Positions 2,081 to 63,441 of a DNA stretch of 64,000 bases are shown here, in pieces; the first letter of the stretch is position 1; each line of letters begins with the position of its first letter. The position numbers and the translations under genes are program-made. The DNA is from Octopus bimaculoides. Its lineage: Eukaryota. The stretch lies in the NCBI RefSeq assembly GCF_001194135.2, contig NC_069005.1, forward strand, positions 31,594,571 through 31,658,570, read 5' to 3'. The notes beneath the pieces are model-generated. The model ran no database searches, was not told the DNA's origin, and was given only the letters and a program-made list of their open reading frames with translations.

Positions 2081-2316
2081 AAGACCATGCTTTTAAGGAT
2101 CATTTCTTAAGTATGTGTCGCAACGGTATCCGGTTCTATTGAGCGGATCAACAACATCACGATGATGCGTGATCGTATTGGGTCCTGAGCGTGAAGCAGG
2201 ATTTCCTTAATCGTTCGTTACTCCGCTTTCAACGAATGTGAGAAATCCATTGAAGATCGTTCTTGAGAGGTTTAACAACTTCTTAAAGAGGGACTCAATA
2301 CTTTCTGAGTGATGTT
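2081..2316 (+). ncRNA. U3: U3 snoRNA, copy 1 (complete)
   Basis: Starts AAGACCATGCTTTTAAGGATCATTTCT (boxes A'/A; human AAGACTATACTTTCAGGGATCATTTCT). Has box C' GATGATG (2161), box B CTGAGCGTGAAGC (2185), box C CCATTGAAGATCGTTC (~2247) and box D CTGA (2305). An 8-bp terminal stem forms between AACATCAC (2153-2160) and GTGATGTT (2309-2316). Confidence 0.93.
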
Positions 2317-2861: not shown

Positions 2862-3235
2862 CTCTATCTACTACTACTGTTGCTGTTGCTGCCGCCGCCA
2901 CCACTATTTACCACTAAATAAGCTGTAAACAAAATATTTCAACAAGGTAAACGCATGTCAAATACAAAACCGGATATTAGAATCAGCTGATGATGTCATC
3001 GCACAATTTAACAAAAACATCTTATACAAACCAGTTTCTAAATATTAAATCAAATGTATTTTCCCAATTTTAAGATGTAGAACAATTTAGAATAAAATTA
3101 TTAATGATAATATATAGAGTGACTTAAATTTTCTTCAGAGCATTATTAATTAATTTATTTTAGGTATTCTCTAGCACCACTACATAATTATACGGAGCAT
3201 ACGTATATTATTTTGCTGGGTAGCTAAAGTTAATC

Positions 3236-3471
3236 AAGACCATGCTTTTAAGGATCATTTCTTAAGTATGTGTCGCAACGGTATCCGATTCTATTGAGCG
3301 GATCAACAACATCACGATGATGCGAGATCGTATTGGGTCCTGAGCGTGAAGCAGGATTTTCTTAATCGTTCGTTACTCCGCCTCCAACGAATGTGAGAAA
3401 TCCATTGAAGATCGTTCTTGAGAGGTTTAACAACTTCTTAAAGAGGGACTCAATACTTTCTGAGTGATGTT
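3236..3471 (+). ncRNA. U3: U3 snoRNA, copy 2 (complete)
   Basis: Same boxes, length (236 nt) and terminal stem as copy 1, with a few substitutions, all outside the boxes. Confidence 0.93.
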
Positions 3472-5522
3472 ATTTTTACTACATTAACAATAGAAAATTA
3501 ACAGCGAAGAAGGGCGAATGCGATTGAAATTCCTTAGATAATTGCTATCAACTCCATAGTGAACAATGAATCCGCTAACAGTGGAAGGGAGAGAACTCAA
3601 ATGATATTTCTGGGAACGTTTGTTCAGGATGACTTGTGACATTTTTCCGTCTCTTCTTTCGTGTTTATAATATCGGGAAACGATGCGAATCTATGAAGAT
3701 GATTCATTAATTGCCATTAGTTCGTTTGACTAAATTTATGCCGTAGGGGTAGTTTCAGAGAATTTGTTTAATTCTGCCGGAATATGAGTAAGACAGTGTG
3801 AGAGAGAGGGAGAGAGGACAATCACCTCAATTAAAGATATTTTAGTCGTCAATGGAGCCTCTAATCGGTCGCTAGAATTGTTAGAAATAGCAGTTAAATC
3901 TCGTTCAAGTCTCACACATCATTTAAAAAAAAAAATGATCTGGACAAATTAGATCAGACAGACTACATGGTGCTACATAAGCTCCCTCATTGGGGGAGTC
4001 ATATAGGGGTCGATTCATTGGCCTTACAATTCTTCAAGGCGATTCCCCCAGCATGGTCGCAGTCTAATGACTGAAACATGCAAAAGATTAAANNNNNNNN
4101 NNNNNNNNNNNNNNNNNNNNNNNNNNNNNNNNNNNNNNNNNNNNNNNNNNNNNNNNNNNNNNNNNNNNNNNNNNNNNNNNNNNNNNNNNNNNNNNNNNNN
4201 NNNNNNNNNNNNNNNNNNNNNNNNNNNNNNNNNNNNNNNNNNNNNNNNNNNNNNNNNNNNNNNNNNNNNNNNNNNNNNNNNNNNNNNNCGTTTGGGGATC
4301 GATCTCAGTAACAAAGATTTTCTTTGACTTTCGTAAAATAAAAAGTAAATTCACCGTAGAAGGAATTCGAACGTCAAGTGACGGAATGCGTAAACATAAT
4401 ATGCACTGTCATGCTATTAGCTGTCAGAAGTGAAAGTGCTCACTGCTAGTGAAGTATCTGTCTGTCTGCCTGCCTGTCGATTCTTTGGCTACGGCCGCGC
4501 GAACTTTCGAGTAATAGATAGAGAGAGAGAGAGACAGACAGACATATAGCTCGCTCCGGCCAGTCATGGTATTAGCTGTCAGTAGCCAAAGAATCGACAG
4601 GCCAGCAACAGTACAGTACGCAACTGGTACTTAATTTATCGACCTCGACGGAATTTGAACTCAGTAAACATAATATGGTATAACCTTAAAATATCATTAA
4701 GGTTGGTGTTTAATGAATATAGATAATTTTAAATAATCCTTTGGGATGCGGGGCAAATCGATTTTATCGATCAACTGGTATTTAATTTATTGATACGGAA
4801 AAGGTGAAAGGTAAAGTTTACATCAGCAGTATTAACAAACCGATAGTACTAAGTAATCGGAACTTCGCCTAAATTTCAGTATCATCTCTTAATAATTTAT
4901 AGTTTTCTGTTTGGGGTGTAGTTTATTTCATATTTGAATGAACACAATAATTGCAATTTACACCGAAATTGATTTTGATAATCATTTGATATAAATATAA
5001 AACAATACGATTACTTATGGAGATAACATCAGTCGGAACGTTTATTGGTGTTTCACCGGGAAGTAATTTCTTAAGCTTGTAAAAATATAATTCACTGTTG
5101 AACCATACGGAATTTGAATTAACAACGTAAAGTGAAATAATGTGTAGACATAAAGTATTATCATCTGAAAATATTAAGATTGATAATTATATTAAGTATA
5201 AACAGCGATAAGTGATAATACAAGCGAAGAATAATGACGCATGTCAAATACGAAACCGCATATTAGAAGCAGCTGATGATACAATCGCAAAATTTAACAG
5301 AAGTAGTTTATACAAACCAGTTTATACATACTAAACCTAATGTTTTTTCTTAATATTTAGATACAAAACAATTTAGAATAACTTTAAAAAGGAAAATATT
5401 TATTTAAACTTTACATTTACTTGAAAAATTAATTAATTTCTTTGTTAATTGTATTCTTCGAGACCACTACATAATTAGAACACCAAAATGTATATTAATC
5501 TGCCGGTTGCTGTTGGTTATTT

Positions 5523-5568: not shown

Positions 5569-5779
5569 NNNNNNNNNNNNNNNNNNNNNNNNNNNNNNNN
5601 NNNNNNNNNNNNNNNNNNNNNNNNNNNNNNNNNNNNNNNNNNNNNNNNNNNNNNNNNNNNNNNNNNNNTTGATTTATTTAAAACAATAATTACTGAATTT
5701 GCTAAATGTATTCGGTGAAATCACTATAGGATTGTTGAAGCCACATATATATGGGTTTGCTGGGTAGCCAAAGTTAATT

Positions 5780-6015
5780 AAGACCATGCTTTTAAGGATC
5801 ATTTCTTAAGTATGTGTCGCAACGGTATCCGATTCTATTGAGCGGATCAACAACATCACGATGATGCGAGATCGTAGTGGGTCCTGAGCGTGAAGCAGGA
5901 TTTTCTTAATCGTTCGTTACTCCGCCTTCAACGAATGTGAGAAATCCATTGAAGATCGTTCTTGAGAGGTTTAACAACTTCTTAAAGAGGGACTCAATAC
6001 TTTCTGAGTGATGTT
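5780..6015 (+). ncRNA. U3: U3 snoRNA, copy 4 (complete)
   Basis: Same boxes, length (236 nt) and terminal stem as copies 1 and 2. Confidence 0.93.
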
Positions 6016-7662
6016 ATTTTTAGTAAATTAACAATAGATTGTTTTTCTCATGTAGCAGGTGTCACGAGATTGTTAATTTCGGTCATCGACACCCATCAGC
6101 TGGATAGATGAAAGTCAGACCTCGGCGGAATTTGAACTCAGAACGTAGTGCAATTGATTGATGATTCATTTTTTTTTTCTTTTTAAACGAAAGACTTAAT
6201 ATACCTGCTAGAAACAGCAGTCAAAGCTCTTGTTTAAATCGGCGATTTAAATAAGAGTTTTGACTATTATTTCCAGCTGGTAGACATACTTAATCATGTG
6301 TTGCAATTAATTTTAATGCTTTTTGGGGCCTGCAATTCATTGTGAATATGCTAGTGTGTTTACGTCCCCGTAACTTACTGGTTCAGCAAAAGACGCTGAT
6401 TGAATAAGTACTAGGCTTACAAAGAATAAACCCTGGGGTCGATTTCTTCGACTTAAAAACTCTTAAAGACGGTGCTCTAGTATAGCTGCAGTCAAATGAC
6501 TGGAACAAGTAAAATAATACATATACACTGACTAACTTAAAAGCCGTCCTATCTGGCGGCTTTTAAGCAACTGACCCCGAATAGGAAGATCCGCAAACAG
6601 ATCTCTGTTTCCTCCAGAGTCATATCCCAAAGATGATCATATTCGTCGCAAAAAAATCGCCAAAAACAGTCGCAGTAATGAAAACATAGGAATTGCGGAT
6701 TCGGTCCGGAATGTTTTTAATTTACTCGCGGAGTCAGCCTGATTCCAAAATGGTATTATATGTTGGGCTACGGCCTCTAGGAGTAAAGTTGAAAAAGTGT
6801 GACACACTGACATTCGCATTTATTATATTAGATGTTTAATTTTGGGGAAACTGTATTTCAATCTAAGTGTATTTTATATATAGCTTAACGCTTTAGCAAA
6901 AAATGAAATAAGTAGCAGGCTTTAAAAATATAAGTTCCAGGGTTGATTAATTCGGCCGCTGTCTAATGACTGGAAGAAATTAATAAAAACACACACACAC
7001 ACACACAACCAATCACATATTTTTATATATTTATATGTTGGGGTAATAGTGATTCTCGAAGCACATCACATACAGCTATAAAGTGTAGCATGTAAATGCA
7101 CACACACAATATTGATTTCTGACGAAGGGACAATAGAGTTGAATGAATTCGCGTCTCCCTGTATAAGACTGATACCTTTTGTTTTATGAACCAAGGAAGG
7201 GATCAAGAAGGCAAAGTTTGAACTATTTGTCTATTATTATAATTTTATTCACCTGAAATTATCACAGACGAATTTCGTATTTTGTGGGTCAGTTTTGTTC
7301 CGCAAAGGAAACGGGACATAATTAAGAAACATAACCACGTTTTCTTTTGTTAGAGTTATGCCCCTTTAAAATCTTTTACTTTTTTACTAATGTGTAACGT
7401 AAAATCAGGCCTCCTTCCAGGGTGGACTATAATAATCCCTTCTGCTATAGGTACAATGCCTGGAATTTGGGAACAAGGGACTAATCGATTACCAGTACAC
7501 AACTGGTACTTATTTTATCGATGCCTGAAGGAGTGAAAGGCAAGAGTCGACCTCGGCGAAATTTGAACTCGTAGCGTAAAGGCGTACGAAATTGCCGCTA
7601 AGCATTCTGTCCGGCGCGCTAACGATTCTACCAGCTCTCCGCCTTCCTGGGTGAAACTATTC

Positions 7663-10980: not shown

Positions 10981-11007
10981 ATGGAACCTCCTCAAGTTTC
11001 TCTTAAG
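10981..11007 (+). CDS. AGTRAP: AGTRAP-like (type-1 angiotensin II receptor-associated protein) exon 1: MEPPQVSLK
   Basis: GCCATGG Kozak context, donor AAG|GTAAGA, phase 0. Matches human MELPAVNLK as recalled. Confidence 0.85.
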
Positions 11008-32089: not shown

Positions 32090-32124
32090 GTCATTGTTAT
32101 AGTTCACTTTATTTTGACAGTATG
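32090..32124 (+). CDS. AGTRAP: AGTRAP-like exon 2: VIVIVHFILTV(W)
   Basis: Acceptor TTTTCCAG|G, donor ATG|GTGAGT, 35 nt. Matches human VILLGHWLLTTW. Confidence 0.9.
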
Positions 32125-34073: not shown

Positions 34074-34188
34074 GGCATCGATGCCAACCAGCTTTTTACC
34101 ACTTTCCTATACATACATGAATGCCTTTGTCTTGGCATTTGGAGTTTGGGGAATTGTCAACCAGGAATCTACAGATGCCATTAGTATG
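34074..34188 (+). CDS. AGTRAP: AGTRAP-like exon 3: ASMPTSFLPLSYTYMNAFVLAFGVWGIVNQESTDAISM
   Basis: Acceptor TTTGCAG|G, donor ATG|GTAAGT, 115 nt. Matches human SYAWANFTILALGVWAVAQRDSIDAISM. Confidence 0.93.
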
Positions 34189-34734: not shown

Positions 34735-34828
34735 TTTTTAATATTGAAAATATTTACTATAATTCAAGACATTGTTTTCTTGGGTATCTATCAACCAAGG
34801 GCCTATGCAGATAATGGAAAATCTTCAG
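34735..34828 (+). CDS. AGTRAP: AGTRAP-like exon 4: FLILKIFTIIQDIVFLGIYQPRAYADNGKSS
   Basis: Acceptor TATTTTCAG|T, 94 nt, GC donor CAG|GCAAGT. Matches human FLGGLLATIFLDIVHISIFYPR. Read-through meets TAA five codons later. Confidence 0.88.
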
Positions 34829-36690
34829 GCAAGTATAATTAATATCTGCGTATTCTGTGCAAGTTAAGAGTGATGAGTGAATATTTTCTGCCTTGTATTG
34901 GCTATAGAAAATAGCCTAATATTAGGGCTTATAAACCCCTGAGAGAAACAAAATGAGCATCATTGCACATACCAATGCCCTTTTTTGTCTTTCTCATCAG
35001 GGGTTTATATTTTCTAACAGATTATTTTCTATAGGTCTATATGCAATGAAAACATATTTATAATCAGCACAGAATTTTGTCAGTGAACAGGTCGCGGTCT
35101 CAAAGCGACGAAAATATTTTGACAAATTAAATTTAAATGTTGAAGTGAATCTAACGGATTTTGTGTGTTATTTTAAATGGCTTATAAACACCTTCCACGC
35201 TGCAATTGTTTTCGTTCCAGCACACGATCTCAGATCAGGTCACTTGCTATGCAAGTGCATCTCCATATTTATAAGGATATCCATAGATTTCAGTTTATTT
35301 CCATTCACAACTGATATCCTGTTTAAAAAAACGTTTTCAGTACTGATAGACCTGTCTGTTCCCCACTGCCTCTCTCCATCCCCCATTTATTTTCTATGTT
35401 ATGCTTTGTACGTGTTCTGCCAGGTTTTTGCTTTATTATTATTATTATTAGTAGTAGTAGTAGTAGTTTTTCTTCTTTCAATTTTATTTCTATTTCTTGC
35501 TGAAGTAGAAACAGTACTGTACTGTATATTCTTTTTATTTTTATAACTTGTATATGTTTATTTTATTATAAATGCAAAACAACACCACGGAGGACTCGAC
35601 AGAAGCTTAAATAATAAACCATGATAGGTGAACCACAATATGACAAGGGATTACTTACTGTATACCAAATCAAGTTAAATTAAATTAAAAAAAAAGAATA
35701 CATTTACATGGAAGGTTATTGTTGTTTAAGTGACAATGCTTCTTCTCAATACATGTGATGTTCCAGTTAAAACAAATCTTTTGCACTTCTTACAGGGATG
35801 GTAAGCCAGAGAGCATTCTCAAACCGTTTTCAGTTTCTGTTTTGGTCATTCCTTGCTTAATCAAGGTTGATCTAGGATTCAGATCAATCACTGATCCAAT
35901 TGGCCATTCTGTGGTCACTTGAATAGAAAATCTAGTTGGAGGTCAAATAAAGAATTTGAATAGTTGGAAACCTTGCCACAGCAGTAACTGCAATCGGTCT
36001 ATGGGGCAAGGTAGATAACTCTGCCCAGAAGAAACCAGCTCCATTTTTGGCGTACAGGTGAAGTGGTGAGCACTAGGAAGAGATGATGGTGATGAATATT
36101 CTGTTCTTTAAAATGTCTACAAAGTAATTTTCTCTGAGACAAAAGCAACAGCATCATACCTTTCAGTGGTGTATATATGTTAAGTGTGATCCACAAGTAG
36201 CTATTTTAAAATTTAAAATTCAAGAAAAAAAAAAAAACAGATGTTGCTGTTTAACCCTAGGTCATCCCTGGTCAACTAGGCCCATGATGAAAGGTGTTCT
36301 AACTATGGGCTTTTCTTTCAAACTCATCCTTTTATTTATTTATTTTTTTTAAATGATGGCAACATGATAAAAGGGAGATTTGCTTGCTATTTCTAGCAAT
36401 TCATACAACTGTGTAGCAGCTCTCTTGTTGGCTCAAAGAGAAAGTGTTTGTGTCATTAGATCATTCATCATCATTTCCAGGCTTGCACAAGTTGGACAGA
36501 ATTTGTTGAGGCAGGTTTTTTTCTACGGCCGGATGCCCTTCCTGTTGCCAACCCTCACCTGTTTCCAAGTCAGGTAATATTTTCCTATGACCGGAATATC
36601 ACAGAATATTGCAAATGGAGGCCACTGCTTGCATTCACATAACAGTGACACTTGTTTACAACTTAACATGCAATGCCAAAGCAAGGAGAC

Positions 36691-36921: not shown

Positions 36922-36955
<34 letters not shown>

Positions 36956-38800
36956 CATAATCTCTGCTTTCTTCTGCTTTTAATTCTCAAATGCACGCTG
37001 CACCTTGCATGTCTTAAACCCTGCTTTGTCTGTATTTTCAGAAATGAGCTGTGTTCATGAATACAGATTCTCTCTTGCGTATCCTTTTCCCCATTTAGTT
37101 TTACCTGAGTTTCTTTTTGTTTGTTTGTTTGTTTGGTTGTTGTTTTCTTGCTTGTTACATTCCTTTCTTTTTTCTTTTTTTTTTTGCTGCACCATTTTCT
37201 TAACTCTTTCAAGTCTTCAAGCATGTGGTTGTGGTGTGAGGTTTGCCTACGAGCCTGGCTGCAGTAGTTTTTAGTTAATTATTAAGATCTGTTAATTTTG
37301 AAGAATTCTAAGGAGTTAAAAACAAATTGGGGGTGTTTTTTTTTTTGTTTTTTGTTTTTTGGTGGAGTGGAGAGTGACTACAATACAAAACAATATAATA
37401 TCAAAACAGTGAAATCTAAGGAAGTTTGTCATTATACTGTGACCATCGCTGTAACCAACAGTTTGCCAGTTATTCACCCTGTACTTTGAGAGTACACCTT
37501 CACTCACTCTCTCTCTCTCCCCCCACCTGTCTCTGGGGAAACAGACACCTGTTCTTATCCCACTCATAGTTCCACATAGCCTTGGGTCAACTCATACTTT
37601 GTGAATGAAACTTGGAGAATGGAAACTGTACAGAATCCCATCAGATGCACCTGGGTCCTGCAATGTCACACTGATCCTGCCTGAGAATTACATTGATGTA
37701 CATGTGTTTGTGTGTGTGTGGAATACTCAGCCACTTACACGTTAATTCAAACAACTAAATCCTCATCACTGAATGACAGGAAACCAACTAAATGTGTGTG
37801 TGTGGGTGGTGTAGGTGGTGTGTGGGTGGGTGTGGAGGTGGTCTATTTGTGTGAATGTGTATGTATGTATATATATATATATGTATGCACACACATTTAC
37901 CCACACAGAAAAAAATGTCTGACCACATGAATCCTGGTTTTACTGTGAGTATATTGTCCTGGAATTTAGCCCACCTCCCACACATGCCCACCTCCCTGCT
38001 ACCATTTTTATAGAGAATAGTGGGGGTTGTCGAATATGTGACTGACTTGTCCTATTTAGTTCAAGTACTGGAAGGAAGTACTTGTCATTTATAATGATGG
38101 TGATGATAATTTTTTTTTTTGTCTATTTTTGGCTCAAGGTCAGCAGTTTTTAGGCAAAGGGTCAAGTTGATTACATCAACCCCAGTATTCAACTGGTACT
38201 TATTTTATCGACTTCCCCCAAAAGGTGGAGTAGCAAAGTCAACCTCTGTCGCATCTGAACTCAAAAGATGATGTGTCGGAAGAAATGTCACGAAGCGTTT
38301 CGTTCTTCCTGGTGACAATTCTGCGAGTTCATCACCTTAATAATAACGGTTTCAAGTTTTGGAACAGGGCAAGCTATTTCAGAAGTTCAGGTACTTGACT
38401 GGTGCTTTATTTTATTGCCCCCCTACCCTCCTCCCTCTCTCTCTCTCTCTCCTTTGATGGAAAGCTTCTTACAATGTGAAAAAGTAAAAGGTGTAATAAT
38501 CTTTATATTTCAAGCACAAAAGCCCACCATCAGAGGTAAATAGTCAAGAAATGTTAGTCTATTTCGTACCTATATGGAACCAACTATCAACATGGCTAGC
38601 ACTGCCTAAACTCTCATTTCTTAGCTGTTTGTCTCTGATGGTGGGCTGTTATGCTTGAAATATATAAAAGTTATGAAACCTTTTCCTTTTTACAATATAA
38701 GAAGCTCTCTGTCTTCACTATTTTGTAATACTAATAATAATAATAATAATAACAGCAACAGCAATAATCATCTCACTAAGATATTATTTTTCTATTTCAG

Positions 38801-38831
38801 ATCTCATTGGTACATACCAGTTTGGTCTTGG
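38801..38831 (+). CDS. AGTRAP: AGTRAP-like exon 5 (31-nt micro-exon): (D)LIGTYQFGL(G)
   Basis: Acceptor TCTATTTCAG|A, donor GG|GTATCCTT (U12 consensus). It links the phase-1 upstream intron to the phase-2 downstream intron. Matches human DTGRFGVG. Confidence 0.82.
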
Positions 38832-39224
38832 GTATCCTTACCATTTGGGACTTTTTTCACAACAGGAAAAATGTTCCTTGCACATCCACCTATCTACTCT
38901 TGTACAGGACTTTAAACAGTCACATCGTATATTATTTCCTCCCACATGGATTTGGTCTGCAGTCTGAGTTGTCTCTGTCAACTTTTGTCTTTCATCCTCA
39001 GAGGGAGGATTTCAAGCTCAGTTGTGTTCTATGTTCTTCTAAATCTTCCAATTTGCAGTTTAGTGTGTGTTCTTACTATGAATAACTGCAAATATCAGCT
39101 TTACCACACTTTTCCTTTCACTCAATGTATTAAGAATGAATATGTACATTACTGTTTTGGTTTTCTGTTCTCCATGCATGGGATTATATAATCATAAATA
39201 TAGAAATCTTGATTGATAGATATC

Positions 39225-39490
39225 CTAGATAGATAGATGGATAAATATCAATGGTAGGTGGATAGATCAACTGATAGATAGGTAGATAACAGATTGACAG
39301 ACCGACAGATTGACAGACAGCTCGACAAATAGATTGACAGATCGACAGATAGACAAATTGACAGACAGGTTGACAGACCGAGAGTGACAGATCAACAGGT
39401 AGGTAGGTAGGAAGACAACTAACCTAATAGACATTGACAGATCAACAGATAGATTGATAAATCGACAGATAGACAGACAGACAGACAGAT
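39225..39490. repeat. Degenerate (GATA/GACA)n microsatellite inside the U12-type intron
   Basis: AGAT, GACA and TTGACAGA units. Confidence 0.8.
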
Positions 39491-42393
39491 ATCTGCTAGA
39501 TTGTTGATCATATGATCATAAGTCACAGTTTTGTTTCCTCCCTTATGGAAAAGCATCTAGTGCAACTCTAATTTCCCATTGTTCCTTCTACTCTACACAA
39601 TAGTGGTTAGCAATGGGAAGGACATAACCACCAGAGCAAAATTTGCTATTCCGACAAAATGTCAAAAAGGAAGAAATTGAAGTGGAGGCTTGGAGACTTG
39701 TGAGTTCATCTCTTAGAACTAGGGAACGTTATTTTTAAAACCTCATTCTCTCTCACTGAAGTGGATTTTAAGTTTTAGCTTCCGTCACTTCATTGGAACA
39801 TTAATAGCTTTTATGTCATCATTTCCTCGAACAAATGCACTTGGAAGAAACAGCAGCACTGGTGGTTGTGGTGGTGAGGATGGTAGTGGTGGTGGCTTTA
39901 AGGAGATAGCAATGGTAGCTGTGGTAGAGGTGAGAGGCAGTGGTTGTAATGAGGATGCTAGTGCAACTTGTTTGATGGTGATAATGAGAGCTTAATGATG
40001 GTGATGGATCATATGACAGTGTTCACATATTGACAGCTGTGGTGGTAATAAAAAAAAAGCGCAACGGGCCACAATCATGGCCGTCAGGCCACAATTGTGG
40101 CCCAGATAGATGCATTTAATTTATGGGCATTTGTTGGGGTCTAATGTCACACAAATGTTCCAATACCCCTCAGAATGCAAGAGGACTAATAGTTCAACTA
40201 ATGACTTTCCAGATGGTGTAAAACTTACCACCATTATATACTAAGAAGATATTTTAACTATTTTTTGTTTTTTGTCTGCCATCGTGCCTAGTATATGAAT
40301 TCGTCTCACACGTCTTATATTAACATATTATATTGTGTCTATATGATATAAAACACAACTGGAGAAATCAACGAACATTCATATCAGCTATTATTAAGGG
40401 CAGCAAGCTGGCAGAATTGTTAGCATGCCAGGCAAAATACTTAGCAACGGTTCTGAGTTCAAACTCTGCCGAGGTCAACTTTGCCTTTCATCCTTTCGGG
40501 GTGGATGAAATAAGTACCAGTTGAGCTCTGGGGTCAATGTAATTGACTTACCATGCTCCCCAAAGGAGATTCAGTATGACACAGACTGTGACAAAGCTGG
40601 CCCTTTGAAATATACGTACAACTCATTTTTTTGCCAGCTGAGTGGACTGGTGCAATGAGAAATAAAGTGCCTTGCTCAAGGACATAATGCAGCACTGGGA
40701 ATCGAGGTCACGGCCTTACAGTCATGAACTGACTACCCTAACCACTTAGATATAGACCTTCACAAGAAGTACAGCTTATGAGAAGACTGAAGGCTGACTG
40801 CAATAAAGACAAGGGGACTGGTGTCCATTGAAATTTATCTAAATATACCACAAAAACAGGTATGCTTCCCAGTTTTTTTGTTTTTGTCTTTGTCTCTCAC
40901 CACCACTCATATTGTAAGAAACATTTCCTTTCTCTCATCTAATTGACAGGGGATTCTAACTATGAAAATGTTCACAAATATGTATATATATCCATGACCA
41001 ATGAATAATCAAAATGGAGAGGAGAAACCGGTTGAGGTTATTTTAGTTACCATTGTATTATTAATTACTCTTTCTCTTTTTGTTTTGAGAATTACACTTA
41101 GTTGTGTTTTGGTTTTGTTACTCTCTCCCCTCCTTGGCCCAGCCTCGTCTAAGCTTTTCTATTTTTCAGAATTAACACTTTCATTAACATTTTCTAAAGT
41201 AGTACGTTATGTTTTTTGTTAATTTTTTAAAATAACTGTAAATTTGGAAAGATTTAATTAACAAGCTTTATTTTTAAACTGTTTGTTTGAATTTTGTTAA
41301 ATCAGACAAAATTTGTCTGAGAAATTATTATTGTTCTTGGAGAAATCTTCTGAAATGTTGAGATTTTAGCAACCAGGATGAGGGCATTAATCCAAATATA
41401 TCAATGTATTATGATATTAGCCCTGTTGATACCAATCCAACTGTGACCACCACTGTCTCTTTCAAAGTAATCTAAATTAAAACCTTTCACCAAAATTTCA
41501 TGTTCATTTATGTTTCAAACACCATCTTAATAATGACAAAATTATCTTATTAAATTCTTGATTATTTTCAAAACTTATTGAAACAAAAGCAGTGTCTTTC
41601 AACAGAAATATGACAAGAGAAGGATTAACCCTTTTGCTACCAACTCACCTGAGACATGTCCTGCTTCTATGATATACAAACTTCCTGTTTTAATCCTTTA
41701 GCATTTAGATTTTTCTGTCAATTGTAAAGCTTGTCTATTCACATTATTTCAAATTAGGCATTATCTCATAGCTTTAAGAATTCAATAATGTGACTGTTGC
41801 ATTTTTAAAATGACATTGTAGGGTAGGTGTGAAAGATCGAATCTGGCTAGTTGAACATAAAACATTAAATATCTGGGCTGGATATGGCCAGTTTAAATAC
41901 TGAAGTGATCTAAATTTTAAATCTGCCATTTAAATTTCATGTTAATTAATATTCCAAATACCAGCTTAATAATGACAGTTATTTTTAGTAAGTTCGTTGT
42001 TATTTTCAAAATTAGTTGAAACCTAGGCAACATATTTCAACAGAAATATAGTAACAGTTGGGTTTAGTTGATGTTTGAAATATAGCAAACAAAATATTCT
42101 GATATAAAAGAAAATTTCGAGTTTCAGTTGAAATACAAACATTTTTAAAAGGAACAGTTTTGTACCCTGGAAACTAGAGGTTGGATTGTTATCAAGAGTT
42201 TAGGCTGGGTGGATTTGTAATTTAGTCTCCAACCTACTCGAGATTGTATTTTTGAGATGTATAGAGATGTATTTTTGGAGCGTTGTAACAGCAGTTTCTT
42301 GCCATCCTCATGCATTATTTCTCTTCCGTTGTCTTCAAATCAATGAATGTAAAAAACACGAACAAGTTTCAATTCCTTGACCTCAGCTGTTAG

Positions 42394-42500
42394 CATGAGC
42401 ATTGTCAACTTAATTCTAAAGCCAGTCTCCTGTTTCTTACTGTATCGTATCTATCAAGATCGAGGAGGAATCTATGAGACATTCAGCATACCAGGCCTCA
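42394..42500 (+). CDS. AGTRAP: AGTRAP-like exon 6: MSIVNLILKPVSCFLLYRIYQDRGGIYETFSIPGL
   Basis: Matches human MAILSLLLKPLSCCFVYHMYRERGG. Preceded by U12 branch site TTCCTTGAC (42373-42381) and TAG at 42391-42393; donor A|GTAAGT. Confidence 0.92.
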
Positions 42501-43317: not shown

Positions 43318-43427
43318 CATCCCATACAGGTGGAACATATGAAAACATTGATCAACCTGTCCCCACTAACAACCTCGAGGCAGCGTCCCCTCGTCATATG
43401 GCAGACAAGCTCCCTCTGGACCCCTGA
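43318..43427 (+). CDS. AGTRAP: AGTRAP-like exon 7, last coding exon: (T)SHTGGTYENIDQPVPTNNLEAASPRHMADKLPLDP*
   Basis: Acceptor TTTTTTAG|C. YENID matches human YQTID. The spliced CDS totals 27+35+115+94+31+107+110 = 519 nt, which is 172 aa plus stop with no internal stop. Confidence 0.9.
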
Positions 43428-50825: not shown

Positions 50826-51344
50826 ATGGCGGAAAGGCGCCGGGCAGCACCTGTCTCAGACAACGAAGTATCACCGGAGAGTCTTCGCACTTACAAATCC
50901 AAAAGACATGCTAATACCAAAGAGAAAAGCTTCTTCGATACCCACTTGAAAAGGAAATTCTTATTAGGGGTCCTCATCGTTTCTCTGTTGTTGTTTTTCT
51001 GTTTCGTATTATGGAATACCTTTTTTTCAGACTTAGATCAGGACTCGGACGGCGTAAAACGTTCGTCCAGCTCCCATTCTCAACCTCTTAATTACAGGAC
51101 TGGTTCCGGTAATTTAAAAGGGTTTCGGGATATTAAAGACCAGATCAACATCGTACTCACTTTCACAAATATCGAAAAAAACCCGCGCTTGAGAGAAAAG
51201 TTGAAGATATGCGTGAATTCAATTTTGAAACACACTTCAAGTAAATTGGTTATTTTTCTCATCGGCGATCGTTTCAGCCAAATTGTGGCAGGAGAAATCA
51301 TCGATGGTGCTGCTCTTGCTGTCAATTCCAGGATCAGGTATCAA
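50826..51344 (+). CDS. XXYLT1: Xyloside xylosyltransferase 1 (GT8 family), coding exon 1
   Basis: 173 codons with type II topology: short N-terminus, transmembrane FLLGVLIVSLLLFFCFVLW, stem region. Donor CAA|GTAAGT, phase 0. Confidence 0.88.
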
Positions 51345-54192
51345 GTAAGTAAAACAAGTTTCCTTTCCTTTCCTTTTTAAGGGGAGATAGTTACAAACAT
51401 AAAGCTTTATGTAAAGGTATGTCTACACTTTAGGGCTCCATGCCGTCGACTTTAATTTTTTTATTATTCTTTTGAAAATGTATGTTTTTAAATCAAATTT
51501 TACACAGATGCACTTTCGAATGTGTAGATTATGCTTATTTCGATATCATTTTAAAATGATTTATCTTTCAGGAGTTTCGAATTATTCTTTACTCCCAAAT
51601 GACTTTGCTCCAGATAATTTCCGTTACTTGCGCATTAAAATTTTTGTTTTCAAATTTATATATTTGAAATATTAACATTACATTATATGCACTTTCGAAA
51701 AAATATTTTTCCAAAATATCATTTAAAAATATGCTTTCCAAATTATTCTCTCCTCTCTCGCCTGTGTTTTGAAGAAATTCAGTCGAGGAGAGAATGATCC
51801 GAATTTCCTCTCTATTTTTTAATTTTTTAGTGTTATCATAAAAAAAAAAATAATATTCTACACTGTCGATAAGATATCTACAGAATTTTGTTAAAATATA
51901 TATACATTTTCCCCCTGAAAGTTATGAGGAAGCGAGTTCTTGGGATACCAAACTATAGTTATGCACACAATTTTACAACCTTTAATGCAGAGAGGTTGGA
52001 TATCGTAATATCTTTAGAGTCTACCCACAAAATTCCGTAGGAAAGGAGGAAAAAAAAAATTTTCTATTCACCGATATTGTTTCGAACCTAGAATTATTCC
52101 AATAAAGAATAAAAGAGATCGGATTAAAATTTAGGAGAATGGAATATTTTCCTAGAGGTGAGTTTATAAACAAGTGACAATTACTGGAGTACGTAGACGC
52201 CCTGGGAAGCAGATGAATTAACAAAACAAGGAACACAAGAATTTAATAGAAAGCGATTACGTTCCAAATCTTTCACAAATCAAAGAATTCTTCAAAAGGA
52301 TGGGGAAATATTGGGAAGAATCAATAGATAAACAATCGAATTTTAATCCCCCGTCAATGTATAAAATGTATCATACACTGAGAAAAATTAATAAACACAA
52401 ATTTCGTAAGCTTTGAACAGAGTCGTGTTTCTTAAAGCTATCACAAACAGGTCACAATGGAATCAGTCACTTTTATATTCTCGTGGGAAATATTCAGAAA
52501 AAATGTTTGGCATTTATTGGTTCGAGTGTAAAATGTACCAGTCTTAGAAAGAGAGGGGATATTTTAAAAAATGCTCTTAAAAAGCCCACCAAAGCTAGAA
52601 GTACGATTCCTTTTCAAAGATCCACCAACCAGTTTATATAGGCTACAATAAGATTTAACAACAGAAACATATAATTGTTGTTTAGTTCGGTAAAAGAGAC
52701 CTATCGAACAAGTATCAAACTTGAAATATATATTGAAGGCAGTTTGTTTGACTAAACCATATCAAGGTAGTGCCCCAGCATGACCGTAGTCCAATGATTG
52801 AAACAAAAGATAAAACAACTGTTCTACCTTTGATCTTATTTATTATTTTTTTTTTTTTTATAGTTCTTTTAAATAAGGGTTCTAATATATCTTCCACGGT
52901 TTGTTATGTCCTACCTACACAAACGTATCCCCTGCACGAATTTGTTTCCTCATAACTTTCAGAAAAATGGCAATTTTTTTTTAATGAAATATTCTATAAT
53001 AAGCTTCAGATGGTGTAGATTCCTATTATATTCGGAATTAATGGGGGGGGGATTCCGAAAGTGGGGAAGAGAAGTTTCGGAAAATTCACGTAAGTCGACT
53101 TCGTTTCCTCGTAATTTTTGAAAAAATTATATTTTTAATGAAATTCTCCACAAATACTTTTTAGATGGTGTTGAGTAAATTTTATCGGAATTTGATGGGG
53201 AAAAAACTTTTAAAAGTTATGAGGAAACAAAATCGATGGGGTAGGGCACACTTGTGTAAGTATACCATCAGCTTTAGCAGCAGATATTTAAATAAATAAA
53301 GCTGTTTGCTTGGCTTATGCAAGGTGGTCGAATAGTCACGAAATGTGTTAATAGTTCGTTTATGTTACGTTTTGAATTTACAACACATTACCATCATATA
53401 CAGTAGGTAGATAGATAGAAAGGAAATATATGTAGGTTAGGTGTGAAAAATCACATCTTGTAATTTACGAAATAAAAAAGAAATAATAATAGTAATAAAA
53501 CACATTTATTTAAATTTCAGATCCCTTTGTGAGTTAATCCACCTTGTATACTAGAATCGAGCAAATATGTCCTGTACTTAACAGTACAGCGATGTTTCGA
53601 GGTAGAAGACCCGTGTCACATGAGGAAGAAAAAGGTTACGGAAGAAGGGAAAAAGCAAAATGCTAAAAATATAAAATAATAATAATAACAATCAAAATTT
53701 TGGGGGAAAATATTTCTTTTTTCCCCACTAAAATCGTAATTTCTGTTGTATGAAAGTCAGCAATACTACTTGTAAAAACAAAAAGGATAGAAAAAAAAAC
53801 TACCCTTTTCTTTTCCCATGTGGCATGGGACTTATTAATCCGAAACTCCGGTTAAAGAACCTACAATGTTCTCAGTCCAAGTAGTGTGGAGCACCTTGCT
53901 GAAGGATGCAATGTACAACTAAGAATCGAGAGAGGGGGAGGGAGTACACATATAGCAGTACGTAAAGGGAGATAACTAAACATTCAATATACCAGACTAA
54001 TAAGTCAACGACGAAGCACGTATGTGGTCTCACGATCTGCTAGTAATAGCAGCCAGATCTCTTCAAATCATACCCTACTTAAAAAGAAATCGTTATTATT
54101 ATCAGTTAAATTAATTTCTCTGTTTCTTTTAAATGTTAATCCTCTGATTTTTTTTTTGTTCAATTTTTTTTTTTTTTTTTCATATTTTGCAG

Positions 54193-54867
54193 TTGATATC
54201 TGTCGATATTGAAAGTCTCACTCGGACGCTTAGTGGAATTTTGGGAAACATCCGATCTCATTTCATTTCTAAACCAGGTGATTATTACAGCGATGATCTT
54301 TTTTTCGTCTCAATGGCCATGCATCAAGTGATGCCCACTCTACTACACAAGGTAATTATGATGGACATTGACACCAAACTACAGGCGGATGTGGCCCAAC
54401 TCTTTGGACACTTTGACCACTTCGCCAAGGACAATGTCATTGGGATTGCTCACGAACTCCAACCAGTCTATCGGCATATTCTTCACCATTATCGGAATGA
54501 AAATCCGGCCACCCATGTCGGTGAACCACTCCCTGATGGCTTCCCAGGGTTCAACAGCGGGGTCATGTTGCTTGACCTCGATCGTTTACGAGAATCCACG
54601 CTCTACAACTCGCTGCTTCAGCCGGAGGTCATTAAGAATTTGACAGAAAAATACAAGTTCAAAGGACATCTTGGCGACCAAGATTTTTACACGCTGGTTG
54701 CGTTAGAGCATCCGCAGCTGTTCTATGTGCTTCCTTGCACTTGGAATCGGCAGCTTTGTCAGTGGTGGCGAGACAAAGGCTACGAAAGTATTTTCGATAA
54801 CTATTATCGTTGTGAGGGCCACATCAATCTTTATCATGGCAACTGTGATACAGTAATTCCAGAGTAA
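54193..54867 (+). CDS. XXYLT1: Xyloside xylosyltransferase 1, coding exon 2 (catalytic domain)
   Basis: Acceptor TTTTGCAG|T. Contains DxD (MDID), FNSGVMLLDL, HLGDQDFYTL, WNRQLCQWW and YHGNCDT, all characteristic of XXYLT1. Joined protein is 397 aa. Confidence 0.95.
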   Translation: MISVDIESLTRTLSGILGNIRSHFISKPGDYYSDDLFFVSMAMHQVMPTLLHKVIMMDIDTKLQADVAQLFGHFDHFAKDNVIGIAHELQPVYRHILHHYRNENPATHVGEPLPDGFPGFNSGVMLLDLDRLRESTLYNSLLQPEVIKNLTEKYKFKGHLGDQDFYTLVALEHPQLFYVLPCTWNRQLCQWWRDKGYESIFDNYYRCEGHINLYHGNCDTVIPE

Positions 54868-55412
54868 GACCAGAGCNNNNNNNNNNNNNNNNNNNNNNNN
54901 NNNNNNNNNNNNNNNNNNNNNNNNNNNNNNNNNNNNNNNNNNNNNNNNNNNNNNNNNNNNNNNNNNNNNNNNNNNNNNNNNNNNNNNNNNNNNNNNNNNN
55001 NNNNNNNNNNNNNNNNNNNNNNNNNNNNNNNNNNNNNNNNNNNNNNNNNNNNNNNNNNNNNNNNNNNNNNNNNNNNNNNNNNNNNNNNNNNNNNNNNNNN
55101 NNNNNNNNNNNNNNNNNNNNNNNNNNNNNNNNNNNNNNNNNNNNNNNNNNNNNNNNNNNNNNNNNNNNNNNNNNNNNNNNNNNNNNNNNNNNNNNNNNNN
55201 NNNNNNNNNNNNNNNNNNNNNNNNNNNNNNNNNNNNNNNNNNNNNNNNNNNNNNNNNNNNNNNNNNNNNNNNNNNNNNNNNNNNNNNNNNNNNNNNNNNN
55301 NNNNNNNNNNNNNNNNNNNNNNNNNNNNNNNNNNNNNNNNNNNNNNNNNNNNNNNNNNNNNNNNNNNNNNNNNNNNNNNNNNNNNNNNNNNNNNNNNNNN
55401 NNNNNNNNNNNN

Positions 55413-57910: not shown

Positions 57911-59163
57911 CCATAATCCACTCTGACCAAGCTATCTGGATAGGAAAATACTTTCTAGCATTCCATTTGACATTAACATGGGCGGGGGCTGTTCAAGGTT
58001 CAGCAGAACTCAGCAATATTATTGGTCTATATTTCTTAACTAAATGAAAATTTAAACTTCTTTACACTGAAGGAAGTCTCTCCAGAGATAAGAGACTTCT
58101 GTCGTTTAAAAATCTTAACTCTTGATAAACTCCAGAAAACTTACATCTCTTTCTTTTAATAATTAAAAGTTCAAATTCTTGTAGACTCTAGTCTTGAGTA
58201 ATGAATATTTTAACTGTAACAATGAACCTCAATAATTTCCTATAATTTATATGTTAATAAATGAGGCCCTACACTACATTCACAAGAGCTCTAACTATCC
58301 TAGGAATATAAACAACTTTACAATGACACTATTACAAAACTGCTCTTATATACAGTGAGTCTGAAAAGAAAATAATGGTATAATCTGCTGAATAATTTAT
58401 CTATAACCATACCAGTCATGAAAATATTTTTTTTTTCATCTATTAAATAACATTCCCCCATTCCCCACTGCATAAATATGAAGAATTTTTTAATCAAAAT
58501 ATATTCTATTACACAAAATTTAGTAAATTCTAACTAATCCTGGTTATGCTTAACTCCCACACTATTCACTGTAACTGTACATAAATCTAAACAATTACCC
58601 CAGTCTGTAGAAACTAACAACTTGTCTATGTCATACATTGGTCTTCTTGAGAATCCCTTCAAATTAATATGTAACCTGCATCCCTACACTTGTCACAATC
58701 AAAATATAAGCATAGATCTTAGATTATTTCTATATTAATTAATCTCAATTCTTTTTTTTATCTTACTTCTTATTCTTACAACACATACCTCTTTTGTTTT
58801 TCACTCTACCTCTTTATTCACTTCTTGTTATGTATATGTATGTATATATAATTTAATATACACAATTACAAAAGAGTTACTAATAAATTCATACTTTAGG
58901 AATTGACAGATTTGTATAACGTGTCATGTATCTCCTGAAAGATTGCTTGAAGATACATGACATGTTATATAAATCTGCCAATTTAATGTAACTTAAAGTA
59001 TGAAAATATTGGTAGCTCTCTCATAATTGTGTATATTAAATGATATTTATTTCTCACTGGATGGAGTACTATTTTTGTTGATTCTACCTATAATGGAACA
59101 GTAAACTATATATATATATATATATATATACTTTATTTAAAAGCAGCAGAAATATAACAAAAG

Positions 59164-62600: not shown

Positions 62601-63441
62601 GTTTGTTAATATTAATGTAACATTCAGTCATTATGTTTTTTATGTAATAACACGATTTATTATATAGACAAAAACTTCCCTCATAGTTTTGTGTAAGTTT
62701 TTTTTTTTTTTTTTAAACTTGTGTTCTAAGCACCAGTTTAATTTAAATAGCAATAAATAAAACCATTAACACTTATTTTACTAATTATTCTCCGAATTCA
62801 TGATTGTTTTGAAAATTAATTGGATAACCAATTAGTGGAGCCACTAATGAAGTTTTATCCTTTATCGGTTTTTGACTATGTCCTAAAACAAGTTGGCAAT
62901 TCTGTAATCTCTTGATTAATTTTATAGCATTCAGGTTACTTTGTTACTTATCTATTCACCTTGTTTTGAATTAGTCAGGCATTATCTCATAGCCTTGAAA
63001 TTTCAGTGATGTGATGGTTTATTTTTAGAATGATATTGTAGGGTAGGTGTGAGAGGCTGAGTCTGGCCAGTTTGAAATAAAACAGAATATTTGGGCTGGA
63101 TGTGGCCAGTTTATATGTTAAAGAGTTGGGCAACGGTAACATTAAGCTTTCGGATTACCCTGCCAAGTATAATGCTTATTTATTCAGATTCATTTGAATT
63201 AATCTTCTATAGGCACAAGGCCTGCAATTGGGGAGTCAGGGGTGCTAGTCGATTACACTGATCCCAGTGCATGACTGGTACTCATTTAATCTACCTCAAA
63301 AGGATGAAAGGCAAAAATCAACCTCAGCAGAATTTGAACACAGAACACAGCGGCAGAAGAAATGCTTCTAAGCATTTCGCCTGGCATGCTAATGATTTTG
63401 CCAGCTCACTGCCTTAATAATGATAATAATAATAAATCGAC

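What the first reader, a model, noticed from the sequence alone, without database searches (positions are those of the whole stretch)
38832..42393. U12-type (minor spliceosome) intron in the AGTRAP-like gene
Seen: the donor is GTATCCTT, a branch site TTCCTTGAC lies at 42373-42381, and the acceptor TAG is at 42391-42393, 13 nt after the branch A. The nearer CAG (42384-42386) is only 6 nt from the branch A. Only this join gives FGL-G-MSIVNLILKP, which aligns with human FGV-G-MAILSLLLKP. Established: RTATCCTT and TCCTTRAC 10-20 nt from the acceptor define U12 introns, which are rare and biased to phases 1 and 2; this one is phase 2. Inference: as I recall, human AGTRAP encodes this segment inside one exon. 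The intron would then be an ancestral U12 intron lost in vertebrates, or a lineage-specific gain.
Basis: partly seen in the sequence, partly recalled or inferred. Interest (0 to 1): 0.8.

Follow-up and report, generated by a model that had tools for sequence, protein, structure and literature searches.

The report
Octopus AGTRAP U12 intron exon switch
The octopus AGTRAP gene has a minor-spliceosome (U12-type) intron that is shared with oysters, scallops, a lamp shell and a worm but is missing in vertebrates, and in Octopus the tiny exon in front of it occurs twice, wired so that only one copy can enter each mRNA.

Summary
GTATCCTT starts at 38832, TTCCTTGAC lies at 42373-42381, and the TAG acceptor at 42391-42393 is 13 nt after the branch A. 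The join 38831/42394 reproduces RefSeq XP_014780950.1 (Octopus bimaculoides AGTRAP isoform X2) exactly. The intron meets every sequence criterion for a GT-AG U12-type intron.

The orthologous phase-2 intron is also U12-type in O. vulgaris, Argonauta, oyster, scallop, Lingula and the annelid Owenia. It is absent in a hemichordate, a teleost, a frog and a macaque, where one continuous exon covers the region.

A second micro-exon (37042-37078, EMSCVHEYRFSLA, isoform X1) lies 1.7 kb upstream and has its own GTATCCTT donor at 37079. Both micro-exons have U2-type acceptors and share the single U12 branch site and acceptor. The interval between them is therefore a hybrid (U12 5'ss, U2 3'ss) that neither spliceosome should remove. 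Including both exons or neither also shifts the frame. This is the interlocked mutually exclusive layout known from vertebrate MAPK8/9 and TMEM87A/B. Argonauta has only one micro-exon.

It is a new member of a known, rare kind. No junction reads were available.

The parts
10981..11007 (+). AGTRAP exon 1 (coding part, MEPPQVSLK), GT donor
32090..32124 (+). AGTRAP exon 2 (VIVIVHFILTV + TG of the W codon), U2-type sites
34074..34188 (+). AGTRAP exon 3
34735..34828 (+). AGTRAP exon 4. It ends in phase 1 and is followed by a U2-type GC donor (CAG|GCAAGT, 34829-34834).
   Evidence: The GC donor is conserved in O. vulgaris.
37042..37078 (+). Alternative micro-exon a (37 nt; (E)MSCVHEYRFSL(A)), preceded by a U2-type acceptor (16/20 pyrimidines, CAG). 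Used in isoform X1, XP_014780949.1.
   Evidence: Conserved in O. vulgaris at L002 52993-53029.
37079..37086 (+). U12-type 5' splice site of exon a (GTATCCTT)
37079..38800 (+). Hybrid interval between the two micro-exons: U12-type 5'ss, U2-type branch region and 3'ss, and no U12 branch motif within 45 nt of the acceptor
   Evidence: Analogy with JNK2: PMC1874599.
38801..38831 (+). Alternative micro-exon b (31 nt; (D)LIGTYQFGL(G)), preceded by a U2-type acceptor (ttatttttctatttcag). Used in isoform X2, XP_014780950.1.
   Evidence: O. vulgaris L002 63310-63340; Argonauta L001 37497-37527.
38832..38839 (+).
42373..42381 (+). The single U12-type branch-point sequence TTCCTTGAC (branch A at 42380), shared by both alternative U12 introns
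42384..42386 (+). CAG 6 nt after the branch A. It is too close for U12 use and gives a stop after exon a or b. It would be in frame only for a direct exon 4 join.
   Evidence: That product is absent from the collection.
42391..42393 (+). U12-type 3' splice site TAG, 13 nt after the branch A
42394..42500 (+). AGTRAP exon 6 (MSIVNLILKP...IPGL), followed by a GTAAGT donor
43318..43427 (+). AGTRAP last coding exon, including the stop codon

Best explanation
The window carries the Octopus bimaculoides AGTRAP (ATRAP) gene. Its intron before exon 6 is a GT-AG U12-type intron removed by the minor spliceosome. The intron is old: it sits at the same phase-2 position (EYRFSLG|M) with U12 signals in molluscs, a brachiopod and an annelid, and all sampled deuterostomes lack it. 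In the Octopus lineage the 31-37-nt micro-exon in front of it exists in two tandem copies. Each copy has a U2-type acceptor and a U12-type donor, and there is only one U12 branch site and acceptor downstream. Exon 4's U2-type (GC) donor can pair with either U2 acceptor, and either U12 donor can pair with the single U12 3' end. Exon a's U12 donor cannot be joined to exon b's U2 acceptor, so each mRNA gets exon a (isoform X1) or exon b (isoform X2), never both. A frameshift backs this up, because 37+31 nt or 0 nt both break the frame. The two exons encode alternative versions of the segment just before the third predicted membrane helix. Shown here: the motifs, their geometry, their conservation, the reading-frame consequences, and exact identity to the two RefSeq isoforms. 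Inferred: actual dependence on the minor spliceosome, strict mutual exclusion in vivo, and any regulation of the choice.
For: The 5'ss is GTATCCTT at both 37079 and 38832, the BPS is TTCCTTGAC, and the branch A lies 13 nt from the TAG. These match the defining features and the 11-13 nt optimum in PMC3584512. The A-rich sequence upstream of the BPS is not a polypyrimidine tract. Phase 2 fits the bias of minor introns away from phase 0 (PMC10639083). The spliced models equal XP_014780949.1 and XP_014780950.1 exactly, and O. sinensis and O. vulgaris have the same X1/X2 pair. The orthologous junction is GTATCCTT plus (T)CCTTRAY 10-13 nt from the AG in O. vulgaris, Argonauta, C. virginica, Mizuhopecten, Lingula and Owenia. 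No intron is present in macaque, Glandiceps, Alosa or Ascaphus. The acceptors of exons a and b are pyrimidine-rich and have no U12 branch motif. a+b, skipping both, and a or b joined to the CAG all give premature stops, and none of those products, nor the in-frame exon 4-to-CAG product, is in a collection of about 15 billion proteins. The same interlocked layout of two U2 3'ss and two U12 5'ss drives mutually exclusive exons in MAPK8/9 and TMEM87A/B (PMC1874599; PMC8329584).
Against: I had no RNA-seq junction reads or cDNA from O. bimaculoides. Both isoforms are RefSeq 'PREDICTED' models, and no transcript-assembly contig carries them. No PWM or intronIC score was computed. DNA similarity between exons a and b is not above chance (z about 1.1; exon bodies 78/1000 shuffles). 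The duplication is therefore inferred from the shared protein motif (YRF.L[GA]), phase, splice-site types and similar (TAA)n-containing upstream flanks. Dependence on the minor spliceosome and the absence of a-to-b splicing are inferred from rules established in vertebrates.
Confidence: 0.8

Rival explanations
1. The intron is an ordinary U2-type GT-AG intron that merely resembles the U12 consensus.
For: The motif counts in the window are at chance level. GT-AG U12 introns are easily confused with U2 introns (PMC8329584). No PWM score or knock-down was available.
Against: The donor matches 8 of 8 and the branch site 9 of 9, in the correct 13-nt geometry. There is no polypyrimidine tract. The same U12 signals are kept at the orthologous junction in nine junctions from eight genomes spanning four phyla, while the surrounding intron sequence is unalignable.
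Confidence: 0.03
2. Exon b is an annotation artefact or a decaying pseudo-exon, and the gene constitutively uses exon a.
For: Exon a keeps the pan-animal EYRFSL motif better than exon b. Isoform X2 is only a predicted model.
Against: Exon b keeps an open frame, its U2 acceptor and a perfect U12 donor in O. vulgaris, with amino-acid changes that stay within the motif (DLIGTYRFALG). An independent O. vulgaris annotation (CAI9740889.1) uses it. Argonauta's only micro-exon is b-like and 31 nt long. The invariant F and the G before M are retained.
Confidence: 0.05
3. Mutual exclusion is achieved mainly by other means, with the U12/U2 mix incidental. Candidates are nonsense-mediated decay of frame-shifted double-inclusion or double-skipping products, or competing RNA pairings between a (TTA)n(GTA)n 'docking' tract (35433-35470) and (TAA)n 'selector' tracts upstream of each micro-exon.
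For: 37+31 nt and 0 nt both shift the frame. Two of only three (TAA)n>=5 tracts on the + strand lie 88 and 49 nt upstream of exons a and b and are complementary to the tract after exon 4. The layout is kept in O. vulgaris and is absent in single-exon Argonauta.
Against: The 'docking' tract pairs equally well with unrelated sites (-31.3, -30.7 and -30.0 kcal/mol, against -23.0 and -28.4 to -32.6 for the two tracts). The two Octopus species are too close (about 87-93% intron identity) for conservation to be informative. The tracts are more simply a footprint of the duplication. NMD can only remove errors; it cannot explain two perfect U12 donors.
Confidence: 0.12
4. Evolutionary rival: the U12 intron and its micro-exon were gained in the spiralian stem rather than inherited from the bilaterian ancestor and lost in deuterostomes.
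For: All four deuterostomes sampled, including a hemichordate, lack both introns that flank the micro-exon. I could not obtain a cnidarian or ecdysozoan outgroup.
Against: Minor-intron gain is described as extremely rare and loss as common (PMC10639083). The simultaneous absence of two or more adjacent 3' introns in deuterostomes (the hemichordate has lost everything 3' of exon 3) looks like cDNA-mediated loss. These are arguments from general patterns, not a test on this gene.
Confidence: 0.3
5. A third, U2-spliced isoform joins exon 4 (GC donor) directly to the CAG at 42386, skips both micro-exons and restores the vertebrate-like spacing (...KSSAVSMSIV...).
For: The join is in frame in both O. 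bimaculoides and O. vulgaris, and the PR-to-M distance then equals the human one.
Against: The product lacks the invariant F and the R/G of the RF.LG motif. The CAG has no polypyrimidine tract and sits 6 nt from the only branch-like sequence. Neither species' product is in the protein collection.
Confidence: 0.05

Closest known systems
Vertebrate JNK genes (MAPK8/MAPK9) exons 6a/6b, and TMEM87A/B exons 11/11a: interlocked U2/U12 mutually exclusive exons
   Same: The order of elements is the same: U2 intron, alternative exon, hybrid interval (U12 5'ss + U2 3'ss), alternative exon, true U12 intron. Two U2 3'ss compete for one U2 donor and two U12 5'ss compete for one U12 3' end (PMC1874599, PMC8329584). 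As in JNK, the two exons are related in sequence.
   Different: The gene family and lineage differ: octopod molluscs, and apparently arisen after the split from Argonauta. The exons are micro-exons of 37 and 31 nt that are not multiples of three, so a frameshift backs up the exclusion. As I recall, the JNK exons are 72 nt. The upstream U2 donor is GC rather than GT. There is no experimental or tissue-expression evidence here.
Canonical GT-AG U12-type introns (U12DB / intronIC catalogues)
   Same: The 5'ss is /GTATCCTT, the BPS is TTCCTTGAC, the branch A is 13 nt from the 3'ss, there is no polypyrimidine tract, the phase is not 0, and the intron is conserved at an orthologous position across phyla.
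   Different: Nothing in the sequence signals differs. It is not described for AGTRAP in the literature I could search, because vertebrate AGTRAP lacks the intron. It was probably scored silently in the pan-eukaryotic survey that included Octopus sinensis and Lingula.
Drosophila prospero twintron / vertebrate nested U2-U12 introns
   Same: In isoform X1 the U12 intron (37079-42393) contains U2-type signals (exon b's acceptor) nested inside it, and the major and minor spliceosomes compete on one pre-mRNA.
   Different: In twintrons, one intron is removed by either machinery using nearby alternative sites. Here each machinery removes its own intron, and the outcome is a choice between exons.
Docking-site/selector RNA pairing (Dscam exon 6, 14-3-3 zeta, ATE1)
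   Same: A tract after the constitutive exon is complementary to tracts upstream of each alternative exon.
   Different: The tracts are A/U trinucleotide microsatellites with no pairing specificity, so I do not file this locus under that mechanism.

Membership tests
U12-type (minor spliceosome) intron, GT-AG subtype | 5' splice site matching /RTATCCTT | tested here: met
   GTATCCTT at 38832 and at 37079, 8 of 8 matches. The same holds in seven orthologous loci.
U12-type (minor spliceosome) intron, GT-AG subtype | Branch-point sequence matching TCCTTRAC | tested here: met
   TTCCTTGAC at 42373-42381, the only match in the window. Orthologues have TTCCTTGAC, TTCCTTAAT, ACCTTAAC, ACCTTAAC and CTCCTTGAC.
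U12-type (minor spliceosome) intron, GT-AG subtype | Short branch-to-3'ss distance (optimum 11-13 nt) | tested here: met
   13 nt to the TAG at 42393, and 10-13 nt in all orthologues (after correcting my 1-nt offset for O. vulgaris). The criterion is from PMC3584512.
U12-type (minor spliceosome) intron, GT-AG subtype | No distinct polypyrimidine tract upstream of the 3'ss | tested here: met
   The sequence upstream of the BPS is gtaaaaaacacgaacaagtttcaa. The pyrimidines counted in the last 20 nt (13/20) are the BPS itself, against 15-17/20 at most of the gene's U2 acceptors and 13/20 at exon b's.
U12-type (minor spliceosome) intron, GT-AG subtype | The junction is actually used in mRNA | tested here: inconclusive
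   The spliced products equal the RefSeq models XP_014780949.1 and XP_014780950.1, and O. vulgaris CAI9740889.1 has the same b-type structure. These are annotations. No reads or transcript contigs from Octopus were accessible.
U12-type (minor spliceosome) intron, GT-AG subtype | Removal depends on U11/U12/U4atac/U6atac snRNPs | not testable with these tools
   This needs knock-down or in vitro splicing. Octopus sinensis is reported to be rich in minor introns (PMC10639083), so the machinery exists in the genus.
U12-type (minor spliceosome) intron, GT-AG subtype | U12 classification by a trained model (intronIC or PWM log-odds) | not tested
   No such model or training set was available offline.
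Interlocked U2/U12 mutually exclusive exon pair (MAPK8/9-type) | Two adjacent alternative exons, each with a U2-type 3'ss and a U12-type 5'ss | tested here: met
   Exon a (37042-37078) and exon b (38801-38831). Both acceptors are pyrimidine-rich with CAG and have no YCTTRAY within 45 nt; both donors are GTATCCTT.
Interlocked U2/U12 mutually exclusive exon pair (MAPK8/9-type) | The upstream flanking intron has a U2-type donor, and the downstream flank has a single U12 branch site and 3'ss | tested here: met
   The exon 4 donor is CAG|GCAAGT (U2-type GC-AG). There is one TTCCTTGAC and TAG before exon 6.
Interlocked U2/U12 mutually exclusive exon pair (MAPK8/9-type) | mRNAs contain one exon or the other, never both or neither | tested here: inconclusive
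   Only the a-only and b-only proteins exist in the collection. The a+b, skip-both and exon 4-to-CAG products are absent. But truncated products would rarely be annotated, and no reads were examined.
Interlocked U2/U12 mutually exclusive exon pair (MAPK8/9-type) | The arrangement is conserved in related species | tested here: met
   O. vulgaris has both exons with both GTATCCTT donors and the shared BPS, and O. sinensis has both isoforms. It is not present in Argonauta, which has a single exon, no gaps and no second RTATCC donor.
AGTRAP / ATRAP protein family (Pfam PF06396) | Significant match to the family profile over most of its length | tested here: met
   Both isoforms score E about 4e-44 and 150 bits, covering profile positions 1-142 of 156. 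Orthologues from molluscs to mammals align throughout.

The most novel reading that the evidence does not exclude
Octopus evolved a spliceosome-incompatibility exon switch independently of vertebrates, by duplicating a micro-exon that happened to lie in front of an ancient U12 intron. This would be the first such interlocked U2/U12 mutually exclusive pair outside vertebrates. It would show that any exon upstream of a U12 intron becomes a ready-made mutually exclusive pair as soon as it is tandemly duplicated. The (TTA)n/(TAA)n tracts might add an RNA-pairing layer that selects between the two copies.
Probability: 0.55. Interest if true: 0.6.

Novelty: new member of a known kind. Interest (0 to 1): 0.5.

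Why it matters
U12 introns are rare, and the interlocked U2/U12 arrangement that forces mutually exclusive exon choice is documented for only a few vertebrate genes (MAPK8/9 and TMEM87A/B).

An independent and evolutionarily young example in Octopus comes with a natural single-exon control in Argonauta and an ancestral single-exon state in bivalves, brachiopods and annelids. It shows how such a switch can arise in one step, by tandem duplication of the exon upstream of a pre-existing U12 intron. It also offers a compact system (37- and 31-nt exons, 1.7-kb hybrid interval) for testing spliceosome incompatibility outside vertebrates.

The locus adds a clear case of a U12 intron that is conserved across Spiralia but absent from all sampled deuterostomes. 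That is useful for reconstructing minor-intron loss.

For AGTRAP biology, it predicts two protein variants that differ just before the third membrane helix.

Tried and rejected
1. Docking/selector RNA pairing between the (TTA)n(GTA)n tract at 35433-35470 and the (TAA)n tracts upstream of exons a and b. The layout was suggestive, but the duplex energies are not specific: unrelated sites pair equally well. I kept it only as a minor rival and as a footprint of the duplication.

2. DNA-level proof that exons a and b are duplicates. Global alignment of the exons with their proximal flanks, and of the exon bodies alone, is not above shuffled controls. The only significant local match is the (TAA)n-containing upstream flank, whose score is inflated by low complexity.

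3. Inverted repeat 38164-38212 / 40501-40549, which brackets exon b and could loop it out. It belongs to a dispersed repeat family, so I rejected it as a specific element.

4. A vestigial exon a in Argonauta. I found no second RTATCC-like donor (even allowing one-mismatch patterns), no EYRF-like ORF and no assembly gaps between exon 4 and exon 6.

5. The human locus (P0100) and Ptychodera (P0106) could not be fetched because only the longest product of each gene is indexed. I used macaque and the hemichordate Glandiceps instead.

6. Literature search for AGTRAP together with U12 gave only irrelevant co-occurrences.

7. An Rfam scan of the window found nothing in or near the intron, only U3 genes elsewhere.

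8. The species behind the unnamed cephalopod transcript clusters (P0002, P0003, P0005, P0012) could not be identified. They show a single micro-exon type, but that does not exclude a second exon in those genomes.
Full report
**The observation**

I read both ends of the proposed intron and recomputed the coordinates.

- GTATCCTT occupies 38832-38839.
- TTCCTTGAC occupies 42373-42381, with the branch A at 42380.
- The TAG acceptor is 42391-42393, 13 nt after the branch A.
- The nearer CAG is 42384-42386, 6 nt after the branch A.
- Joining 38831 to 42394 gives ...LIGTYQFGLG|MSIVNLILKPVSCFLLYRIYQDRGG..., a phase-2 junction.
- Joining the same exon to the CAG acceptor runs into a stop.

The motifs are not over-represented in the window. 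GTATCCTT occurs 3 times against 2.4 expected, and TTCCTTRAC once against 1.4 expected. The signal lies in their exact placement and in conservation across species.

**The gene**

The exons in the window are 100% identical to Octopus bimaculoides AGTRAP, the type-1 angiotensin II receptor-associated protein. I built the full + strand model:

| Exon | Coordinates | Note |
|---|---|---|
| 1 | 10981-11007 | |
| 2 | 32090-32124 | |
| 3 | 34074-34188 | |
| 4 | 34735-34828 | followed by a GC-AG donor, CAG\|GCAAGT |
| micro-exon | see below | |
| 6 | 42394-42500 | |
| last | 43318-43427 | |

Both isoforms match Pfam AGTRAP at E about 4e-44.

RefSeq isoform X1 (XP_014780949.1, 174 aa) differs only in this segment, reading EMSCVHEYRFSLA instead of DLIGTYQFGLG.

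- It is followed at 37079 by a second perfect GTATCCTT.
- Both micro-exons are preceded by U2-type acceptors: pyrimidine-rich, ending in CAG, with no YCTTRAY motif within 45 nt.
- The window contains only one TTCCTTRAC, the one in front of exon 6.

The U12 intron therefore has two alternative 5' ends (37079 or 38832) and one 3' end (42393). [quoted passage not shown]

**Reading-frame logic**

| Splice combination | Product |
|---|---|
| exon a only | X1 |
| exon b only | X2 |
| a + b | frameshift, stop after 140 aa |
| neither, TAG acceptor | stop at 91 aa |
| a or b joined to CAG 42386 | immediate stop |
| exon 4 joined directly to CAG 42386 | in frame, 164 aa |

The exon 4-to-CAG product lacks the invariant F and the RF.LG motif. 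It is absent from a collection of about 15 billion proteins in both its O. bimaculoides and O. vulgaris versions, and so are the two truncated products.

**Mechanism**

This is the interlocked layout described for vertebrate JNK genes. There, a hybrid intron with a U12 5'ss and a U2 3'ss separates exons 6a and 6b, with a U2 intron upstream and a U12 intron downstream (PMC1874599). [quoted passage not shown] An earlier review counted "at least three cases" of mutually exclusive U12/U2 site use (PMC3584512).

The most likely mechanism here has three parts.

1. Exon 4's U2 donor pairs with the acceptor of exon a or of exon b.
2. The chosen exon's U12 donor pairs, through the U11/U12 di-snRNP, with the single U12 branch site.
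3. Exon a's U12 donor cannot be ligated to exon b's U2 acceptor, so the two exons cannot be joined.

The frameshift of double inclusion or double skipping is a second safeguard. The sequence logic is shown here. Minor-spliceosome dependence and exclusivity in vivo are inferred.

**Conservation within cephalopods**

- O. vulgaris (L002) has exon a (52993-53029), exon b (63310-63340, DLIGTYRFALG), both GTATCCTT donors and the shared TTCCTTGAC/TAG. It also has the GC donor of exon 4.
- O. sinensis has both isoforms.
- The two Octopus genomes are about 87-93% identical in alignable intron sequence, so that comparison alone says little.
- Argonauta hians (L001) has a single micro-exon: 31 nt, DFFGTFNFAFG, b-like. 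It has GTATCCTT, TTCCTTGAC and a CAG 11 nt after the branch A.
- Between Argonauta's exon 4 and exon 6 there are no gaps, no second RTATCC-like donor and no EYRF-like ORF.
- Unnamed cephalopod transcript clusters show one exon type, D.LSEYRFALG.

The duplication is therefore most simply placed in the Octopus lineage after its split from Argonauta, although loss in Argonauta is not excluded. Exon b has the length (31 nt) of the Argonauta and oyster exons, while exon a keeps the ancestral EYRFSL motif better. I cannot say which is the original.

DNA similarity between the two exons is not significant. The duplication rests on the shared motif, phase, splice-site types and similar (TAA)n-containing upstream flanks.

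**Conservation beyond cephalopods**

A profile search recovered AGTRAP from many animals, and I fetched genomic loci for a selection. A micro-exon ending ...RFS.G is followed by GTATCCTT, and exon 6 is preceded by a U12 branch motif 10-11 nt from the AG, in:

| Species | Group | Micro-exon |
|---|---|---|
| Crassostrea virginica | bivalve | 31 nt |
| Mizuhopecten yessoensis | bivalve | 25 nt |
| Lingula anatina | brachiopod | 37 nt |
| Owenia fusiformis | annelid | 40 nt |

In contrast, one uninterrupted exon encodes FL...RF..GM...ERGG in a macaque, the hemichordate Glandiceps talaboti, the teleost Alosa and the frog Ascaphus. The human locus itself could not be fetched.

A cephalopod-specific gain is therefore excluded. 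The intron is at least pan-spiralian, and it is missing from all sampled deuterostomes, not only vertebrates. I favour loss for two reasons:

- Minor-intron gain is reported to be extremely rare (PMC10639083).
- Deuterostomes lack both introns that flank the micro-exon, and the hemichordate lacks all 3' introns. That pattern is typical of cDNA-mediated loss.

This is an argument from general patterns, not a test on this gene.

**U12 criteria**

[quoted passage not shown] All of these are met here. [quoted passage not shown] That survey used Octopus sinensis and Lingula as minor-intron-rich reference species, so the intron was probably scored there without comment. I found no paper linking AGTRAP to U12 introns.

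**Alternatives examined**

- A docking/selector RNA-pairing scheme was suggested by a (TTA)n(GTA)n tract after exon 4 that is complementary to (TAA)n tracts just upstream of each micro-exon. The pairing is not specific.
- An inverted repeat that brackets exon b is a dispersed repeat.
- The view that this is an ordinary U2 intron is contradicted by cross-phylum retention of both U12 motifs and their spacing.
- The view that exon b is an artefact is contradicted by its conservation, by Argonauta, and by an independent O. vulgaris annotation.

**Verdict**

The more interesting result is the two-donor, one-acceptor micro-exon switch. It is a new and apparently independently evolved member of a rare, known class.

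The main gap is the absence of direct transcript evidence: both isoforms are predicted models. I rate interest at about 0.5, and novelty as a new member of a known kind.

Noticed in passing
window 2081-2313, 3236-3468, 5780-6012 (+): Three tandem U3 snoRNA genes, 99% identical to each other (Rfam RF00012, 120-125 bits), lie upstream of AGTRAP. Assembly gaps lie between and near them (4093-4288, 5569-5668), so the array may be larger.
   Followed up: partly
window 50826-51380 and 54187-54867 (+): A second gene lies downstream of AGTRAP. One exon-like ORF has a signal-anchor-like N-terminus and no Pfam hit. Another matches Pfam Glyco_transf_8 (E = 1.3e-6), which suggests a family-8 glycosyltransferase. 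The model is interrupted by N runs (54877-55412).
   Followed up: partly
window 34829-34834: The intron after AGTRAP exon 4 uses a GC donor (CAG|GCAAGT). It is conserved in O. vulgaris, whereas Argonauta has GT (CAG|GTCAGT).
   Followed up: partly
L005 (Lingula anatina) 4815-4922 and 6146-6235; Lineus isoforms P0020/P0042/P0025: Other spiralian AGTRAP genes carry tandem alternative copies of different exons. Lingula has second copies of the exon-3-like and exon-4-like segments that match isoforms X3 and X4. Three Lineus isoforms differ only in the exon-4 segment. The family seems prone to exon duplication with alternative use.
   Followed up: no
L008 (Glandiceps talaboti) 3207-3554: In the hemichordate, everything from the exon-4 equivalent to the stop codon is one exon, so all 3' introns are absent. 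That pattern is typical of reverse-transcript-mediated intron loss.
   Followed up: no
window 35433-35470, 36922-36954, 38732-38752: Two of only three (TAA)n>=5 tracts on the + strand lie 88 and 49 nt upstream of the two micro-exons and are complementary to a (TTA)n(GTA)n tract after exon 4. The layout is kept in O. vulgaris and absent in Argonauta. The pairing is not specific, so this is probably a duplication footprint.
   Followed up: yes
L002 (O. vulgaris) 54780-54787 and 58720-58727: Two further GTATCCTT motifs lie inside the enlarged (10.3 kb) interval between exons a and b. They are not preceded by exon-like sequence. One shares 13 nt (GTATCCTTTTCCC) with exon a's donor flank. They could act as decoy U12 5' splice sites.
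   Followed up: no
window 38164-38212 and 40501-40549; also 38504-38664: A 49-nt inverted repeat brackets exon b, and a 58-nt-arm hairpin lies 140-300 nt upstream of it. The former belongs to a dispersed SINE-like repeat family (6 copies in the window, 12 in the O. vulgaris locus).
   Followed up: partly
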